A DNA stretch of 64,000 bases from Phallusia mammillata (GCA_965637545.1 OZ281494.1:11718001-11782000), one strand, 5' to 3'. Numbered from the stretch's first letter, positions 25,092-34,000 are shown. The notes: generated by a model from the letters alone, not told the origin. Numbers and translations: made by a program.

Positions 25092-28000
25092 CTGAAAATA
25101 TAAAATAACGGTAAGTTCGGCTGGTATAATATGATTGGGTTTTAAACGGTCTTGGTTTCGGTATAATTTTATGACAGTGGAACTTTCAACACATTTGTAT
25201 CTTGACAACTTAAGTACAGTATTATGCAGTACTAGCATTTTGTGTCCAAAACATATTTGCTTAAAGGTCAACGTAGAGTACGAAAACTGCCAATAGTTTT
25301 GCCAAGAGGATGTTTATTTAAAAGAAAGAAAATGTTTCAAGGGTTTTTTTAACAAAACACAACGACACACAACAAAGAATACTTACATTGTGCAATGCTC
25401 CAGATGTTATGTGTTAGCGTGTAAGCAAGCAAAAAAGAGTGAGGTTAAATCTAATTCATGGTATACACGAAATCAAGTTCTGTTTAACTGCGATGATATG
25501 TGCATAATATGTTTAATGTGTATAATATTTGCGTATGACCTGTCTTGTGAAGTGTAGCAAAAACTCTTAGTTTTGTGAACATGGCATACAATTTTTGGCG
25601 GCAGATGTAGTTTATTGCATATTTTTAGACTGGAAGAAACGAAAAATAAAAGCGGGTCTTGCGATCTTTTAAGACACGATAAATGTTAACGCTGAAATAA
25701 GTACTCCGTGTATCGCGAGAAGATGCCACTGCCGCATGGCGAGTGTGGCGCCATTGCAGCCTTGTTGTGAGAATGAGTAGACTGAAGTTGTTGTGGTGGA
25801 ATGTGGTTGGTTGTGGTGGTGATGGTGGTGGAATGGGAACAGAAAGAGAGTTGAGCGCACAGTTAGCCAAGTCGTAGTTTTATAGGTAGAAAGATTTAAG
25901 GGTATTGTATTCTAAATGTAACCACACACTGTGTATCCTAGAGTTCACTACAGACAGAACACAAACTGATACCTTTCTCCGAAAGCGTGTTGATGTTTGT
26001 TTCAAAATTTTTAAAAAAACTGTAGGAACCTTTAAAATTTTGTCAATTAGGTAGTTTTTTGTGGTATCTAGACATTATGTATGCGTTATCTTTTTCTGCT
26101 TCATCTGAATTTATAAACGAAAATTGACAGTTTCCACTTGACCTAATGATCATCCGGTAAATGGTAGCAGTTTGTGTTCTGGAAACTAGAACTAAGCGTT
26201 ATTGGTAATTATAACGCCAAATCACATTCTCCCTGGAGCAGATCTACTTTAAATTTATATTAAAGTTGCTATTTGATCTCACCTGATGAGTTTGGACACA
26301 TATCCTCGTCATCACAGTCGTCTGGATCTGATCCCTGTGGACAAAACAAAGATTTTTTATTCAAAACAGTCGACCCTTAAACTGTGTAATCTGCAATGTA
26401 ATAGGCGGATATCTTACAAACATGTGCTACTTGATCAAACTTATAAAGTACATTTAACATTTTAAGCAAAAAGATAACACGAATTCAGAGTTGCATTGGG
26501 CTTTTTTCCTGTATGTAGCACTATTGGATTTGGCCAGAAAAGATCAATATAAGCTAAATTTAGATGACCATTGGCAATTTCATTAAAAAACACAAAAAAG
26601 TGCTGCTGGAGTACATGTATGTGTTTGACATAGCAGCAAACTTACATTTGGAACGAACGGCGTTGACTTGGTTGTTGAAAAAATGGTTAATGTGGCCATG
26701 GTGGTGGTTGGTTGCGAGATGGTTGGATTGGTTGGTGAAATGTCAGGACCACCTATTTTCGTGACGTCACCATAGAACTGAACACGGTCGTCATCTGAAT
26801 AAAGCAAGGTGACAGAATCAGAATAACACATGACAAATGGTATAACTTCTGTAGAATCACATTTAAATCTTGTTCAAGTGGTCCAAAATAGTGTGTTTGG
26901 ATAAGATCGTTTCCATTATTAAGCCAACCGTTTAGAAACGTAGAGAATGTTAACCCTTCCTTCTTCATCGTACAAGTTTTGTACAACCATGGTATTTCTA
27001 GTTTATATTAGTAATTTGAAAACCTGTATGAAACCAAACTTCTCTGTTTCACATATTTTTTTATAAATAACGATGTGTGGGAATCTTCACTTCGACTTAT
27101 TAGCTATTTAAGTGAATTGCCCATATCGGAGATAACAATAAACTTACTTCTTGCTGCGAGATCGAACACACGAACATCGTTGAAGAAAAGTCCCATCATT
27201 TGACCGACGAAAGGTTGCGTGATATCTGGGGATCGTCTGTTGCGTGTTGGTTGTTGCAACGTGGACATGGCGCTCTCACTGAGCAATCCACCGATTTGAA
27301 TAGTAGATTGCGAGTTAAATACCGAAGCCACTCGCTCTGTTAGAACATACAAAGGTTTTGCCGTGCAAAGAATTGTTTTGCTTGGTTTTGGATAAATTAA
27401 CAACATTAAGTTTGAATGGTAGTTAATTGTTTAGAATTTTGCAACAGGACAAGGTTTTTACAAAGTGATTTAATTGAAAGTCAAATAAAAAGTTATACTA
27501 ATCAAAAAATAGACTAGTGCTATGGAAGATTTAGGTTAACTAACAAAATCGTAGAAAAAGTTCTTATTGTGGTTATACCTTGTGTTATTACTTCCATGCA
27601 TTATGTTAGTTGTTGGATATTAGAAACAAGTAACATGGATGAATTGTCAGTTGTGAAAGTACTGGTTAGTAGCTGAAAACACACACACGCTCTCACACAA
27701 ACAAACAGTACACACAATCATACACACATAATCGCGAGTTAGCCAAAACCAAAAGAAAAAATGTTAGTACCTTTGCCTTGCAACCACGAATCAACCGCGG
27801 GTCGGGCAGAGGGTGCAATGGACGGGCTTGCAAGGGCAAAGCGGGAACGTGCATCCCCTACGACAAATAATAGGCAGAGTGAGTTTCACACCAATGGCAA
27901 GACACGAGCAGATGTACACAAGTTGTTGTTAGTACACCGGTGCATTGCTGCGGCTCTTCATACTGATGTGTACCAAACTAGAAGCAGGTTGTCCATACTT

Positions 28001-31000
28001 TGTAGTAAAATACGTTCTAACCGATTAATGCTTTTGGGAAATAGTACAACTCATAGTTAATTGGTGTGGGTTTTTTAAAAGGTTCATGGGAGATCATGAC
28101 GTAAATGTTATAAATTTAACCCGATGGTTCCCAACCGCGGAGGAATTTTTAAAACTGTATGGAAGGAATTTACTTTATTTTGACATGTGGTTTGTAAATA
28201 GACACTTTAGCTCAGGTAATATAATCTGTGAGGTTGATTAAAGACCCAATTTTAAATGATATTTGTATGGTTCATCCACTATGTAGTCTATCAGGGAGAG
28301 ATGACAATATTTTGAATTGTTAAGGAAGGAATTCGTCGAAAAAGTTTGGGAACTACTAGTTTAACCTATTCATCTATGCAATTTCATTCGAATGGTGAAC
28401 GATAAATTACGTTCATTTTCTGTTACTAGTTGCTAAAACTCGTCATCATTGTATAAAACCAGCATCATGTGTGGTACGGGGTATTCCTGATGAACCCCGG
28501 CGGTCATGTTAGTAAAATGAATTCGTGCAAAGACACCAGTTAGAAATGTAATCACGGGTTATTTACCAAGTTGGATTCGGATAGTAAATGCACATGCAGT
28601 TTAATGTGACTTTGAATGCCAACCTATATCTCTGTACATTTTGCGAGTTTAAAGACATGCAAGACTGCTGTTGCATCGACCTGCCAATGTTAATGCGCTT
28701 ACTGACCAAAAATTGTTTTAAAAAAGATGTTTTAGTTTTAAAAAAGATGTATTCTCAGTAGGCTGAATCATAGCACGCCAGGCCTATTAAAGGCTATACC
28801 GAAAATCCCGGAAAGGCTCCTGTAGTAAGTTCGAATTTTTCTAGCTTACGCCTTGTCATATGGGAATGCTTGGAGACCGGCTGATTCCGAATAACACCCT
28901 CAATAGGCCTGGCGTACTTTGATTTATATATGATTGTGCCGTGATAGCTGGTCTGCGTTAATGTTTCAGGGCTGATCCCAGTTGTGAATTTATGTCCATC
29001 TTAACTTAGCAGGCAGATTTCCCATAATGCGCTCAATCGATTGGCAAGTTGATCAACAGCATGCATGAAAGTCACATATATTAGCAAACGATATTGCCCA
29101 AACCTATAAGTGCGATTTGTCGCGGACTGACATAGCGAACTACTTATTCAGCTAAAATACCTTGTTCTATGCTATATCGTATACCCCTGTAAGGTTACGA
29201 GTGTAAAGAAAACACATCACACAACAGCGCGTGTACTCACCACTAGGCGTAATACTTCTCACTGGCCAGTTGTTCACCCTCATCGTGGCATTGAGCCAAC
29301 GCCTGCGAACTTGTACAGTGTGGTAACTACCGTCCGACACCGACCTTTCTTCACGGAGTTCCACAGTTCGTCCGCCACCCACGTTAAAACGAAGCGTCAG
29401 TTTGCCATTCTCCTGCAGTTGCACCAGAAACAGTGTTACTGTGTTTATTGGTATGGTTGGATAGCGTGTTATTTATTATACAGTTATGGACAAATTGTGA
29501 AAACCATGCACCGATTTCACTCAAAACACATGCGCTCCTCGGTACCTCAGACCAGCTGTCCTAAGTTTCTGCGCAAAACCAGTGTCAAAAATGCATCCAA
29601 CTAACCCATTAGCCAGGGTGAAATGGCAACCGCAGGGGGTTGAATGTGTCAGAATTGACAATCTTGAGGCATTAACGCCGAAATGCAAATTCGCTCGCGT
29701 ACTTGGAATAGTTTATCGAACCAGATCTGGCATTCAACAGTGGGAAATGTTATTGATCTTTTTTTTAAACATATGCAAAAAGGTTAACACAGCGGTCCAT
29801 CGAAATACTGGCTTAAACTGAAGCAGAGAGTGGCAATCTTCTAGGATGTGCATGCAAGAATATGTGACTCGAGATTAAGTTCGAACCCATAGAATACTTT
29901 ACGATGCACCAACCAACGTATGAGCCGTATCAAAATTTTCATGTTTCGGGGGCATGTGGGTGAACCGCTGGGTCATTCGGGGTTAAACTTTGGGCGGATT
30001 AACTTCGGATAACTAACTAACATGTGTGAAATTTTAAATAATTTAAACCACTCTCTCTTGACCAAACGTTTGGAACAAATCAGCGCTGCACAGAAAAAAG
30101 TAATATTCTATAACTGTTCGTAACTAGGTTTGTTGATAATGTGCGCATCGACTTCTGGGCCGAGGACAGCGAGAACAGCACTTGAAAAAAACGCTTACCA
30201 AACGAAATGAAGGTTAGGCGACTCTTTTGCACACGATGAAATGTATGTACGACTTTGCGAGCCTTTGACAAACTTGTTAGCTTTCACACGCACACCCATA
30301 CACGCCCACACACACACACACAGACACACGCACACTCACACACAGAAACGTGGCATTCTCAATGCAAAATCTTCTGTTAGCGGCGCCAGCAAAAATAGGC
30401 ACTTGACGTGATCCAAAAAGAAAACGTTAAGTACGCTGTAGTTCTTAACCTGTGGGTAATTTGAAATTTTGCAGGAGGTAATTACGTCATCATACGTCAT
30501 CGTCATACTTTTGTGATGTTATAGTTAAGAGATTTTTGAAAAGGGACAAATGTACCTGTGGTTGCTTTCAAGGGTAACAATATTAAAAGGTTAAGAACCA
30601 CTGAGTTAAAAAAACGCGGGCTAAAAAATTGACAACTGTTTTCACACTGCGCCACCAAGCGACAAAATTTCTAATTTACTCTGTACGGCGTAAAGCCTGT
30701 TTTCTCCTAAAACAGGGAATATGACATAAGATCACGTCAAAAGCGCCTACCGCCGCAACTTATGCAAACCATGCATTAAAAACCGACAGGCATTAATACG
30801 ACGGCCAGCAACGCCGTGCAGCATGGAAACCTCCTTACAATGCTAAGCCGAAGGTAGTCTCGGGGATTGCGCATTGCCGAGTACACTGTAAGCAGGACGG
30901 CGTCGGGAGAGCGGCTCGCAAAGGCAATGTTCAGAACGTCATAACGTACGCTATGCCCAGAGAGCTCGCACGTAATGAGACCCTTGTTGAAGAGGTAGGC

Positions 31001-34000
31001 AGAAGAGCTTATGTGTTCTGATGGTGGGCACGGTGTTTGGCGTAAAAATAGAAACAATAGCACTTTAGATTAGGTAATATAACACTAAAACGGCTATTCT
31101 CAGTCCCCGGCAAGTGATTGTAATCTGTTCGCGACAGAAAGGCAAATTTTCAGTTCACCAAGGTTTCAAGTAAGGATGGCCTATTGTGTTGATCAAGAGT
31201 AAAAATTTGGAGCTCAGCAAATTGTTCGGATCTTTTACTTTTACAATATTGCCAAAAAAACTTTAAACGTCAAATTTTTTAGCGCAAATTTAAGAGAAGT
31301 TGTACCGGTAAAAACATGCACAAACCTTTGGTAAACTTTGGGCAATCTTGATCTTTTAAAACTTGAAATTCTGAGAACAAATGGCCGAGGGACTGAGAAC
31401 AATTTTCGCCGACATATAAACTCACGATAGAGAGTTGTAGATAGTCTTGAGTCGGCGGGTTTGTGTAACCGCTCACGCGCAAAAGCACACAATTGCGCAA
31501 CGAAGTCGAAAATCCGAGCCCCAGTTTATCAGTTCTGGTGCTCGGGTAGTCGTCACGCCATTTGTACAGTATTAAGCCTGTACCGGAGCCGATACGATAG
31601 CTATGGCCCTCTGTAAAATTCACATGTTATGTTACTTACAACGCCATTTAAGGTGTTGCCGATTTTGCGCCACATAGTCAAAGCTGTATAGCCCTTTTAC
31701 AACATGCCAAAAACTGAATTGATCGAGTTAGTACTCGTTTTGGATATTTTATGCCATCTTTTTAGAAAGTTTCAAATGGTTAGCCAATTAAATAGTTTTA
31801 GGCGTACCAACTTTAAAAATCATTATTGGCATTGTCAAGGCTATGCACAATCTGAAAACGTAAATAAACAGGGCAAATGTAAAATGTTTTATAAGTTCCT
31901 GGTGATGCTGAATAAAGAAATCATGCACGCCATGCATAAGTCCACCACACCATGCTTCAAATATGGAAACTGTTCATGGTGATAGGCAGTAACACTCTCG
32001 GGAGTTGAGCTTTGTATTATTGTTATTAAAATATATAGTATATTATGTTTTTATTTCCTGGTCTTGTAGCATTCGGAAAAGGGTCCTTGATCAAACAAAG
32101 CAAAAAAGCGCCTTTTCGGACGCACTGGTCACACAAATCAGAGCAAAAAATATGTGCGAAAACAAATGTTCGCTGTAGCGTGCGTTCGTTATCACGTGAT
32201 CAACGTTCGTATCGCACACCGCAAGCGGGGTGGGTGAAAAAAGAGGGGTCATGCTTTGAGGGGTGCACACGAGCGCTGCGCCCCGAAGCTGAAAAATCAC
32301 GGCACTCGTAAAAAGCAAAATGAAATGTGTTTGGTGACGAAAGGGGAAGGCAACACACTCGCTCTCCTTCGTTTGTTTTGCTTACCGGGTAGAGTACTGA
32401 CGTCTAAATCGGCCAGCAAATAAAAAGAGTTTCTTTTGTCGCTGAGAGTTATCACTATGTGCCGTTTATTTATATTTAATGCTGGACCAAAATATGCATA
32501 CACTGTATAGTAAGTATAGCGTGGGCTTCGTTTGAAGTCGGAAACATGACGTCACAATCAAGCTACGTCATCAAAAAAGTCTGACGTCATATCTCATCTT
32601 GTTTTACAAAAGAGTTTTATGGGAAGTACAGGCAAAATTGGGAGTTTAAGTATCCATTTACGTTTAAAGTATTTTTACGAAGGACGTCCCTAGTTCAAAG
32701 TTTTTGTTTAGCACTCTTTGCACTATTGTGTACGCGTTTAACTGTTTTCAGAATAATTTTGTAATCACGCATAAATAAAAGCGAACCAAAAACTTACGTT
32801 GCTGGCAGAGTCGGCCTACGTACGACGTGAGGCTACAATCACATTTAAACCCGTCCCAGTGTTGTATGCATACTCCACCATTACTACAAGTGGTGGGAGT
32901 ACAAGCAGGTGATGGTTCTGTGCAAAAATAAAGTACACGTTCAAATTGACACCATCTAACCTTTTTGGTCCTAGGAAAAAAGATTATAAATAATGAAAAC
33001 TACCCCTCCACCCCAAAAAATCGTTTTCACAACACCCAAAATGTAGGTTTATTGCTTGTATGAGCAATCCTGGTTAGTCGGTCTTACTGAGCAAAATAAA
33101 CAGCAGTTTTATTACTTACTTAAGCACCCAGGGTTAACCTTTCCAACTGTTTGTTTTCCTCTTGGATCTCTCATATCCTGACTGACCCCGTTGACCTCGA
33201 GTGACCCCATGCAGCCTTCATATCCGGTCCTGGATGCCACTCTGTCTGGCAATTCGTATTGGTACATATTACCGGGGACGCCACCAATGTAAAATTTTCC
33301 TGCAACAAGGATACGAGTTTTTGTTTGGAATATAAACGAGTAATAAAACTGTTTGAGGTAAAAAAAAAGTCTTGTTTGTTAATAAGACTGTGTTAAACAT
33401 TCTGTGGACATTTATGAGCAAGTTTTTCGGAACGTTTTGGAAGCCACAAAGTTGCTACGATATTCCTATTGATTTACCGAACCACTTAGTTTTTTCAGCA
33501 TTACTCATAAGTGTTTTACAACCTTACAAAAGAATTTCTTCGATAACATCACTGTTTTAGTCTCAAAATGAAGGCAAACTGTGTTTTATTTGTGCTGTTC
33601 TGTTCTAGCATGAGAACATTATAATCGATTTCATCGTGGCAGTTTTGTTTGAAGGTTTAAATAAAACCTCTTAATAAAATCCACATTTGCCTACATATTA
33701 CTGTTATAAAGATATTAACCTTTCTTACCGCCTAAATCGAGGTTCTTATTGCCAACCCGTCCACCTTGAATGACTTGCTGTTTGTCGACTGTGAGGGTGT
33801 GGATGTTATCTTCCGAACGTTCAATGCGAATGTCGTGCCACGAATTGTCGTTCACCAACAAATCACCGTTTACTGTCAGAACCTTTACAAGAAAAACGAA
33901 TATAAGTTATATGGTTTAAAACAGAGGTTGTCAACTTATGGTAAAACTACTCCCAAGTAATTAATCTGGCATGCTTTGTGGTGAGTATAAGTAACAAAGA

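What the first reader, a model, noticed from the sequence alone, without database searches (positions are those of the whole stretch)
27595..27857. SS4 cassette conserved in an invertebrate chordate-like genome, with STAR/RBFOX-type motifs
Seen: an 87-nt phase-symmetric exon in the LNS6 intron after ...PVRSITPS, encoding GDARSRFALASPSIAPSARPAVDSWLQGK. Known (recalled): vertebrate NRXN1 SS4 is [30 protein letters not shown]; shared R-[FL]-A-[LI]-A, I, and V-D-x-W-L-x-x-K. SS4 gates cerebellin, LRRTM and neuroligin binding and is regulated by STAR proteins (SAM68/SLM). Seen: the donor itself, GTACTAAC, contains ACUAAC (a STAR/Quaking-type element). UG-rich tracts follow (27680-27730) and UGCAUG lies at 27600-27595. 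Inference: the SS4 switch and its regulation predate vertebrates.
Basis: partly seen in the sequence, partly recalled or inferred. Interest (0 to 1): 0.82.

Follow-up and report, generated by a model that had tools for sequence, protein, structure and literature searches.

The report
Sea-squirt neurexin SS4 cassette exon
This is the sea-squirt (Phallusia mammillata) counterpart of the small optional exon "SS4" that switches partner binding of the synapse protein neurexin in vertebrates; it is real, expressed and sometimes skipped, but a 2014 paper already reported such an exon in another sea squirt.

Summary
On the minus strand, 27771-27857 is an 87-nt, frame-preserving exon in the LNS6 domain of the single neurexin gene of the ascidian Phallusia mammillata.

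- Expression: spliced RNA contigs from four runs (three studies) include the exon. One run also carries the exact skip junction.
- Second species: RefSeq models of Clavelina lepadiformis include or skip an orthologous 29-codon insert.
- Homology to vertebrate SS4: same insertion point, 29 versus 30 codons, and a collinear motif. A profile of 36 vertebrate SS4 peptides scores the exon above all 10,000 shuffles. Alignments to SS4-containing crystal structures run straight through the insert. The peptide alone is not significant in blind searches.

Prior work: Uvarov et al. 2014 (PMC3933685) described an AS4-like exon in Ciona and concluded it was probably not skipped. New here are the skipping evidence and the flanking signals.

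The regulation claim is only partly supported:
- UWAA elements, the vertebrate SAM68/SLM type, are not enriched.
- ACUAAC is clustered here: four copies in 330 nt, the densest cluster in the window.
- The weak donor GUACUAACAU and an ACUAAC-AUAW-UGCAUG element recur in a second ascidian but not in a third tunicate.
- KHDRBS-like and Quaking-like genes exist in this genome. Which factor acts is inference.

The parts
29241..29412 (-). Constitutive LNS6 exon upstream of the cassette, ending ...NNWPVRSITPS plus one base of the split codon; strong donor GTGAGT
   Evidence: RNA joints 29411>31425 and 27856>29240; Laminin_G_2 positions 27-80, E 1e-09; splice sites read
27928..27933 (-). ACTAAC inside GTGTACTAACAAC, 76 nt upstream of the cassette's acceptor; candidate branch point or upstream STAR-type site; not conserved in the second ascidian
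   Evidence: L005 upstream sequence
27771..27857 (-). SS4/AS4-homologous cassette exon, 87 nt, phase 1 at both ends, 29 codons
   Evidence: translation; inclusion joints in 4 runs and skip joint 27336>29241 in run X4; profile test P<=1e-4; collinear alignment with vertebrate SS4; present in public protein CAB3264446.1
27763..27770 (-). Donor GTACTAAC: weak 5' splice site (no match to consensus at +4 to +6) that contains ACUAAC; the 10-mer GTACTAACAT is identical in the second ascidian
27684..27732 (-). GU-rich tract (GTGTG six times)
   Evidence: no GTGTG in the second ascidian, so conservation is not shown
27665..27670 (-). Second intronic ACTAAC (+101 from the donor)
27595..27610 (-). Composite element ACTAAC-ATAA-TGCATG (+161 to +176); matches 15 of 16 bases of an element at +36 in the second ascidian's intron
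   Evidence: best 16-mer shared by the two introns, shuffle P = 0.011
27148..27336 (-). Constitutive LNS6 exon downstream of the cassette, starting (E)RVASVFNSQSTIQIGG
   Evidence: RNA joints 26794>27148 and 27336>27771; Laminin_G_2 positions 88-125

Best explanation
The 87-nt exon at 27771-27857 (minus strand) is the ascidian orthologue of the vertebrate neurexin SS4/AS4 cassette. It lies in the single neurexin gene of Phallusia mammillata.

Shown:
- It inserts 29 residues into a loop of the sixth LNS (laminin-G) domain, at exactly the place where vertebrates insert 30.
- It is spliced into most mRNA and skipped in some, and both forms stay in frame.

Inferred:
- As in vertebrates, the insert changes the ligand-binding rim of LNS6, so the two forms differ in partner binding.
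- Optional use rests on a weak donor (GUACUA instead of GURAGU) embedded in an ACUAAC motif, plus downstream ACUAAC and UGCAUG elements.
- Those elements could recruit a STAR-family protein (Quaking-like or KHDRBS-like, both encoded in this genome) and an RBFOX-type protein.
- I put roughly 0.9 on homology, 0.8 on genuine alternative use, and 0.3-0.4 on the named regulators.
For: Gene identity and species:
- Laminin_G and Syndecan/neurexin tail domains, with C-terminus ...KDKEYYV.
- The LNS6 region examined matches Phallusia mammillata 'neurexin-3-like' CAB3264446.1 residue for residue.
- The upstream LNS6 exon has a single match in the genome.

Use in RNA:
- GT..AG joints on both sides of the exon in 4 runs from 3 studies.
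- Exact skip joint 27336>29241 in run X4, where the contigs break at the exon borders as expected for a two-path graph.
- Clavelina lepadiformis RefSeq isoforms carry a 29-residue insert at the same point (P0006:1252-1280). Isoform X6 lacks exactly those 29 residues.

Homology:
- MAFFT aligns the tunicate inserts column for column with vertebrate SS4.
- An HMM of 36 distinct vertebrate SS4 30-mers gives 8.7 bits, and none of 10,000 shuffles reaches this. A second ascidian gives P = 4e-4, Clavelina 2e-4, a further tunicate 2.5e-3.
- The best-scoring 29-residue stretch of the spliced LNS6 region (260 aa) is the cassette itself.
- phmmer aligns the Phallusia domain through the insert of SS4-containing structures. 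2r1b scores 135.8 bits against about 109 bits for the same protein without the insert.
- Foldseek ranks 2r1b, 'neurexin 1beta with a splice insert at SS#4', first.

Signals:
- At intron positions +4 to +6 the cassette donor matches the consensus at 0 of 3. Its five RNA-confirmed neighbours match at 2-3 of 3.
- ACTAAC occurs four times in 330 nt, the densest cluster in 64 kb.
- The donor 10-mer and the 16-nt ACUAAC-UGCAUG element are shared with a second ascidian whose introns are otherwise unalignable.
- A KHDRBS-like gene is present (best solved relative KHDRBS3, E 6e-23), as are two Quaking-type STAR_dimer hits.
Against: - Skipping was seen in only one of four runs, from a single short contig with 29 bases on the shorter side. 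Contigs cannot give levels or tissues, so regulated use is not shown.
- The runs are recorded only as 'RNA? (a guess)'. Their spliced joints are what show they are RNA.
- The peptide alone is not significant in blind searches. No neurexin chain appears at E<=10 against all solved structures. It ranks second, at E 0.56, in a six-frame scan of the window.
- A divergent pelagic-tunicate insert (P0004:77-104) does not score (P = 0.33).
- UWAA elements are not enriched.
- The third tunicate (L017:898-984) has a strong GTGAGT donor. It has no ACTAAC or TGCATG in the ~190 nt of downstream intron available. The proposed signals are therefore lineage-restricted at best.
- ACUAAC is also the branch-point consensus.
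- No RBFOX gene was demonstrated; the Fox-1_C search found nothing, which is uninformative.
Confidence: 0.8

Rival explanations
1. The exon is in effect constitutive in ascidians. The one skip junction in Phallusia and the one skipped model in Clavelina are splicing noise without function. This is what Uvarov et al. 2014 concluded for Ciona.
For: Three of four runs show only the included form, and the skip contig in X4 is short and at lower depth. Eight of nine Clavelina RefSeq isoforms, and one further deposited protein, include the insert. In Ciona 0 of 2 ESTs were skipped.
Against: Skipping is seen in two distant tunicates. The exon is a frame-preserving 87 nt in four tunicate species. Its donor is the weakest of six neighbours and is conserved as weak in a second species. 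Logan contigs drop rare variants, so absence of the skip form in three runs says little.
Confidence: 0.15
2. The ACUAAC copies are ordinary branch-point-like sequences, and the single UGCAUG and the GU tract are neutral intron content. The cassette's optional use comes from the weak donor alone, not from STAR or RBFOX binding.
For: UACUAAC is the branch-point consensus. Overall ACTAAC frequency in the window is not raised (18 observed, 21.9 in shuffles). TGCATG is common here at 0.5 per kb. A third tunicate lacks all these motifs. The GU tract is not shared by the second ascidian.
Against: A copy at intron position +3 is too close to the 5' splice site to be this intron's branch point. The cluster is the densest in 64 kb (P 0.002-0.01). 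The best-conserved 16-mer between two otherwise unalignable introns is exactly ACUAAC-AUAW-UGCAUG (P 0.011).
Confidence: 0.4
3. The tunicate insert arose independently of vertebrate SS4, and the resemblance is convergent or due to chance.
For: The peptide alone is not significant in blind searches. Identity to mouse SS4 is only about one third. One tunicate insert does not score at all.
Against: The insertion point is the same, the length is 29 versus 30 codons, and the junction glycine fits a split codon as in vertebrates (not verified on vertebrate DNA). The motif R-[FL]-x-x-A ... I-P ... V-[DE]-x-W-[LF]-x-x-K is collinear. Profile P-values are 1e-4 to 2.5e-3 in four species. The insert adds about 26 bits when aligned in context. 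Starfish and sea cucumber proteins here lack any insert, and Uvarov et al. report the same for sea urchin and fly.
Confidence: 0.05

Closest known systems
Vertebrate neurexin SS4 / AS4 cassette (NRXN1-3, 30-residue insert in LNS6)
   Same: Same domain and same loop. Both are frame-preserving cassettes of 29-30 codons with a collinear conserved motif, and both are optionally included. The predicted fold's best match is the SS4-containing neurexin-1beta structure 2r1b.
   Different: One codon shorter, and only about one third identical. The downstream UWAA-rich SAM68/SLM response element is missing, with ACUAAC and UGCAUG in its place. LRRTMs, which bind the form without the insert, are reported absent from tunicates (PMC3933685). 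A true cerebellin is unproven: one C1q-domain gene has Cbln1 as its nearest solved relative, but only marginally.
AS4-like exon of Ciona intestinalis neurexin (Uvarov et al. 2014, PMC3933685)
   Same: Orthologous exon in another ascidian with a very similar peptide (R-F-A-L-A ... S-I-P ... V-E-x-W-L). The downstream intron is similar in length (430 bp in Ciona, 434 bp here). Few UWAA motifs in both.
   Different: That paper found no skipped EST (0 of 2) and proposed that the exon is not skipped in sea squirts. Here a skip junction is seen in Phallusia, and a skipped isoform is annotated in Clavelina. The paper did not describe the ACUAAC or UGCAUG elements.
Quaking-type (ACUAAY) and RBFOX-type (UGCAUG) intronic splicing elements
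   Same: Exact core motifs lie within 180 nt downstream of a cassette exon, partly conserved between two species. A Quaking-like gene pair is present in the genome.
   Different: No binding or functional data. The UAAY half-site next to the core is present in Phallusia but not in the second ascidian. One copy overlaps the donor itself. The motifs are absent in a third tunicate.

Membership tests
Neurexin SS4/AS4 cassette | Insert lies in the sixth LNS domain, between the ...W-P-x-x-x-x-P-x and x-x-x-x-[IV]-F-N-[ST]-Q segments | tested here: met
   MAFFT alignment A2. The phmmer alignment to 2r1b runs through the insert. Pfam Laminin_G_2 positions 80/88 flank it.
Neurexin SS4/AS4 cassette | Single frame-preserving exon of about 30 codons | tested here: met
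   87 nt, phase 1 at both ends, both forms open. The exon is 87 nt in the second and third tunicate loci too. The Clavelina insert is 29 residues.
Neurexin SS4/AS4 cassette | Sequence similarity of the insert itself to vertebrate SS4 | tested here: met
   Vertebrate-only HMM: 8.7 bits, 0 of 10,000 shuffles reach it. The best stretch of the LNS6 region is the cassette. Caveat: not significant in blind searches.
Neurexin SS4/AS4 cassette | Both included and skipped mRNAs exist | tested here: met
   Inclusion joints in 4 runs, skip joint in 1. Clavelina isoform X6 skips the insert and the others include it. Levels and tissues are not known.
Neurexin SS4/AS4 cassette | Skipping driven by KHDRBS (SAM68/SLM1/SLM2) proteins through UWAA-rich elements just downstream of the exon | tested here: not met
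   UWAA 9 observed versus 10.6 expected, none in the first 230 nt. The trans-factor does exist: a KHDRBS-like gene at G000:C5 about 3.93 Mb.
Neurexin SS4/AS4 cassette | Insert gates ligand binding (cerebellin to the plus form; LRRTM and latrophilin to the minus form) | not testable with these tools
   Only a marginal Cbln-like C1q candidate was found. LRRTM is reported absent in tunicates.
Quaking response element | ACUAAY core with a UAAY half-site within about 20 nt | tested here: inconclusive
   Cores at 27768, 27670, 27610 and 27933. The core at 27610 is followed by A-UAAU. In the second ascidian the core is kept but the half-site is not.
RBFOX response element | UGCAUG within a few hundred nt downstream of the regulated exon, conserved between species | tested here: inconclusive
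   Present at +171 here and +46 in the second ascidian, each time 4 nt after an ACUAAC. Absent in the third tunicate's available 190 nt. No RBFOX gene was shown.

The most novel reading that the evidence does not exclude
The SS4 on/off switch itself, not just the exon, was already in place in the common ancestor of tunicates and vertebrates. In ascidians it is run by a different cis-code: a deliberately weak ACUAAC-bearing donor plus an ACUAAC-UGCAUG enhancer read by Quaking-like or KHDRBS-like and RBFOX-like proteins. Vertebrates later replaced this code with UWAA/SAM68-SLM control.
Probability: 0.25. Interest if true: 0.6.

Novelty: new member of a known kind. Interest (0 to 1): 0.4.

Why it matters
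SS4 is the best-studied molecular switch of synapse specification in vertebrates. Knowing that the cassette is optionally used in ascidians moves the origin of the switch, not only of the exon, to before the tunicate-vertebrate split. It also corrects the published inference that sea squirts do not skip it.

Ascidian embryos take minigenes by electroporation, have few neurons, and lack LRRTMs. The conserved weak donor and the ACUAAC-UGCAUG element therefore give a directly testable handle on two questions: what the ancestral switch was for, and how its control changed.

The gain is incremental. The exon itself was reported in 2014 and is already contained in a public Phallusia protein record.

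Tried and rejected
- Peptide-only search of all solved structures: no neurexin hit at E<=10.
- Blind six-frame scan of the window with the vertebrate SS4 profile: the exon ranks second, E 0.56. Exon-only similarity therefore cannot stand without the positional prior.
- UWAA enrichment: none.
- Fox-1_C domain search of the genome: nothing, which is uninformative for a split, low-complexity domain.
- Amphioxus: neither the representative search nor a word search seeded with a starfish neurexin returned a cephalochordate sequence. Whether the exon predates the tunicate-vertebrate ancestor stays open.
- Metagenome scan for more tunicate loci: only the species already held.
- Clavelina genomic DNA: not on record, so its introns could not be compared.
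- Pelagic-tunicate contigs L007 and L008: upstream exon found, but no recognisable cassette anywhere in the downstream contig sequence; the ~1.1 kb read by eye is very AT-rich.
- GU-rich tract: real, but GTGTG is not shared with the second ascidian.
- A first word search with the C-terminal exon gave one relative only.

Full report
**What is there**

The minus strand of the window carries a neurexin gene.
- Open frames show EGF and laminin-G (LNS) pieces. The last exon ends in a transmembrane segment and the tail ...KDKEYYV.
- Pfam assigns the exons flanking the finding to Laminin_G_2 positions 27-80 and 88-125, and the tail to the Syndecan/neurexin domain.
- The exon in question is 27771-27857. 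It is 87 nt, preceded by a pyrimidine-rich tract and tag|, and followed by |gtactaac.
- Read with the split first codon, it encodes GDARSRFALASPSIAPSARPAVDSWLQGK.
- It is phase 1 at both ends, so the LNS6 frame stays open with or without it.

**Whose gene**

- A search of 1.84 billion representative proteins with the upstream exon returned a 1654-residue protein whose LNS6 region reads the same residue for residue and includes the insert.
- The collection names it 'neurexin-3-like [Phallusia mammillata]', CAB3264446.1.
- The assembly is 240 Mb, and the upstream LNS6 exon has a single match in it.
- The 'invertebrate chordate-like genome' is therefore an ascidian, and the exon is already part of a public protein record.

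**Is it used, and is it optional**

Contigs of four public runs from three studies were laid on 26400-31800.
- The runs are recorded only as probable RNA. Every joint has GT..AG ends on the minus strand, so they are spliced RNA.
- All four runs join 27336 to 27771 and 27856 to 29240, which is inclusion.
- Run X4 also has a contig that joins 27336 directly to 29241, which is exact skipping.
- In X4 the contigs break at the exon borders, as an assembly graph does at a two-path bubble.
- The skip contig is short (29 bases on the shorter side) and at lower word depth (7.8 against 27.6). Contigs cannot give levels, so I conclude only that both forms exist and the included one predominates in these samples.
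- Independent support comes from RefSeq models of the aplousobranch Clavelina lepadiformis. They carry a 29-residue insert at the same point (P0006:1252-1280). Isoform X6 (P0047) lacks exactly those residues, with the junction codon changing as a phase-1 cassette predicts.

**Homology to vertebrate SS4**

I collected 92 vertebrate beta-neurexin sequences with the insert and extracted 36 distinct 30-mers.

A profile built from those alone gave these results:

| Insert | Result |
|---|---|
| Phallusia exon | 8.7 bits; none of 10,000 composition-preserving shuffles reached it |
| Second ascidian (L005:3745-3831) | P = 4e-4 |
| Clavelina | P = 2e-4 |
| Further tunicate (L017:898-984) | P = 2.5e-3 |
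| Divergent pelagic-tunicate insert (P0004:77-104) | P = 0.33, not significant |

- Sliding the profile along the spliced LNS6 region (260 aa), the best 29-residue stretch is the cassette itself.
- MAFFT, unguided, puts the tunicate and vertebrate inserts in the same columns. The shared pattern is R-[FLY]-x-x-[AV] ... [IV]-P ... V-[DET]-x-W-[LF]-x-x-[KR].
- phmmer aligns the Phallusia domain in one piece through the insert of the SS4-containing structures. These score 135.8 bits (2r1b), 133.7 (3mw2) and 128.7 (3mw3), against 107-110 bits for chains without the insert.
- An AlphaFold model (mean pLDDT 83) predicts two helices in the insert at modest confidence (pLDDT about 60-73). Its best Foldseek match is 2r1b, 'neurexin 1beta with a splice insert at SS#4'.

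Against this, the peptide alone is not detectable blind.
- No neurexin chain appeared at E<=10 in the structure-sequence search.
- It ranked second, with E 0.56, in a six-frame scan of the window.

The case therefore rests on position plus profile, not on the peptide alone.

Starfish (nine isoforms) and sea-cucumber proteins have no insert at this site.

**What was already known**

Uvarov et al. 2014 (PMC3933685) searched for the AS4 exon outside jawed vertebrates.
- They found a homologous exon in Ciona intestinalis and lamprey, and none in fly or sea urchin.
- They concluded that the exon arose early in chordates.
- They found no skipped Ciona EST (0 of 2) and few UWAA motifs, and suggested that the exon is not skipped in sea squirts.

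Ehrmann et al. 2013 (PMC3636136) reported no KHDRBS gene in Ciona.

No later paper on tunicate SS4 turned up in four further full-text searches.

- evidence of skipping in two tunicates;
- the flanking signals described below;
- a KHDRBS-like gene in Phallusia. Its Qua1 domain scores 44.9 bits, above the family cut-off, and its best solved relative is KHDRBS3 at E 6e-23, ahead of SF1 and Quaking;
- two tandem Quaking-type STAR_dimer hits in the same genome.

**The regulatory motifs**

- Vertebrate control by SAM68/SLM proteins works through UWAA-rich sequence just downstream of the exon (PMC3636136, PMC5397175). Here UWAA is at the expected frequency (9 against 10.6), and none lies in the first 230 nt. 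That feature is not met.
- ACTAAC occurs at 27933, 27768 (inside the donor), 27670 and 27610. Four in 330 nt is the densest cluster in the 64-kb window. P = 0.002 by random placement, and 3 of 300 block shuffles reach it. The overall count is ordinary.
- The donor AAG|GUACUA matches the consensus at none of positions +4 to +6. The five neighbouring donors confirmed by RNA are GTGAGT, GTAAGT or GTAAGG.
- One TGCATG in a 434-nt intron is unremarkable alone.

The telling comparison is with an unidentified ascidian found on a metagenome contig (L005).
- Its flanking LNS6 exons are only about 50% identical in protein to Phallusia.
- Its introns share no words beyond chance.
- Yet its 87-nt cassette is 75% identical in DNA.
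- Its donor 10-mer GTACTAACAT is identical.
- It has ACTAAC at +3, +36 and +122.
- ACTAACATATTGCATG at +36 matches Phallusia's ACTAACATAATGCATG at +161 in 15 of 16 bases. This is the best 16-mer shared by the two introns (shuffle P = 0.011).

A third tunicate (L017) has a strong GTGAGT donor and neither motif in the 190 nt available. The code is therefore shared by some ascidians, not by all tunicates.

**Mechanism, with steps marked**

Shown:
- a frame-preserving cassette in the LNS6 loop, with both forms made;
- a weak donor, conserved as weak in a second species;
- a partly conserved ACUAAC/UGCAUG architecture.

From established knowledge of the families:
- RBFOX sites downstream of an exon favour inclusion.
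- Quaking sites act by position.
- A protein bound over the donor would compete with U1.
- STAR KH domains read a UAA core, which ACUAAC contains.

Inferred:
- The donor's weakness makes the exon dependent on these elements.
- The two protein forms differ in partner binding, as in vertebrates.

The ligands are open. LRRTMs are reported absent in tunicates. A C1q-domain gene whose nearest solved relative is cerebellin-1 exists, but the margin over adiponectin is negligible.

**Verdict**

- The homology and cassette readings are supported.
- The 'regulation predates vertebrates' reading is not shown. As far as the vertebrate-type element goes, it is contradicted.
- The finding is a new member of a known kind, with a modest new point (skipping in tunicates) and a testable lead (the ACUAAC-UGCAUG element).

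Noticed in passing
window 30838-31017 and 31425-31610 (minus strand): Two similar exons encode the first part of LNS6 and are used one at a time. Both join the same downstream exon (joints 29411>30838 and 29411>31425) and carry the same upstream loose end. Clavelina isoform X6 also differs from the other isoforms in this segment, so the alternative pair seems conserved.
   Followed up: partly
window, just upstream of 31610/31611 (minus strand): In run X1 the contig has about 18 extra bases between exon 31425-31611 and the next upstream exon, compared with run X4. This suggests a 6-codon microexon or an alternative splice site at the EGF3/LNS6 boundary.
   Followed up: no
window about 27190-27260 (minus strand), within exon 27148-27336: The loop after ...IQIGG holds a long insertion with a dibasic R-N-R-R-S motif. 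Similar R/K-rich motifs sit at the same place in the second ascidian, starfish and sea-cucumber neurexins, but not in vertebrates. It may be a furin-type cleavage site.
   Followed up: no
G000:C5 about 3,933,000-3,934,500 (locus L002): A KHDRBS (Sam68/T-STAR)-like gene with a Qua1 motif YLPELMAEKDSIDPSF, a KH domain and a tyrosine-rich tail. Such a gene was reported missing from Ciona intestinalis (PMC3636136).
   Followed up: partly
G000:C6 8,602,959-8,606,001 (loci L003, L004): Two Quaking-type STAR_dimer matches lie 3 kb apart, suggesting a tandem pair of Quaking/How-like genes.
   Followed up: no
window 28183-28213 and 29944-29990: Short intronic stretches are covered by many high-depth short contigs in all runs, with loose ends on both sides. 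They are probably repeats transcribed elsewhere in the genome.
   Followed up: no
protein P0005 (metagenome-derived, 265 aa): A tunicate-like short neurexin form with its own signal peptide and one LNS6 domain, no SS4 insert and no membrane anchor. It may be a beta-like or secreted isoform of an unidentified tunicate.
   Followed up: no
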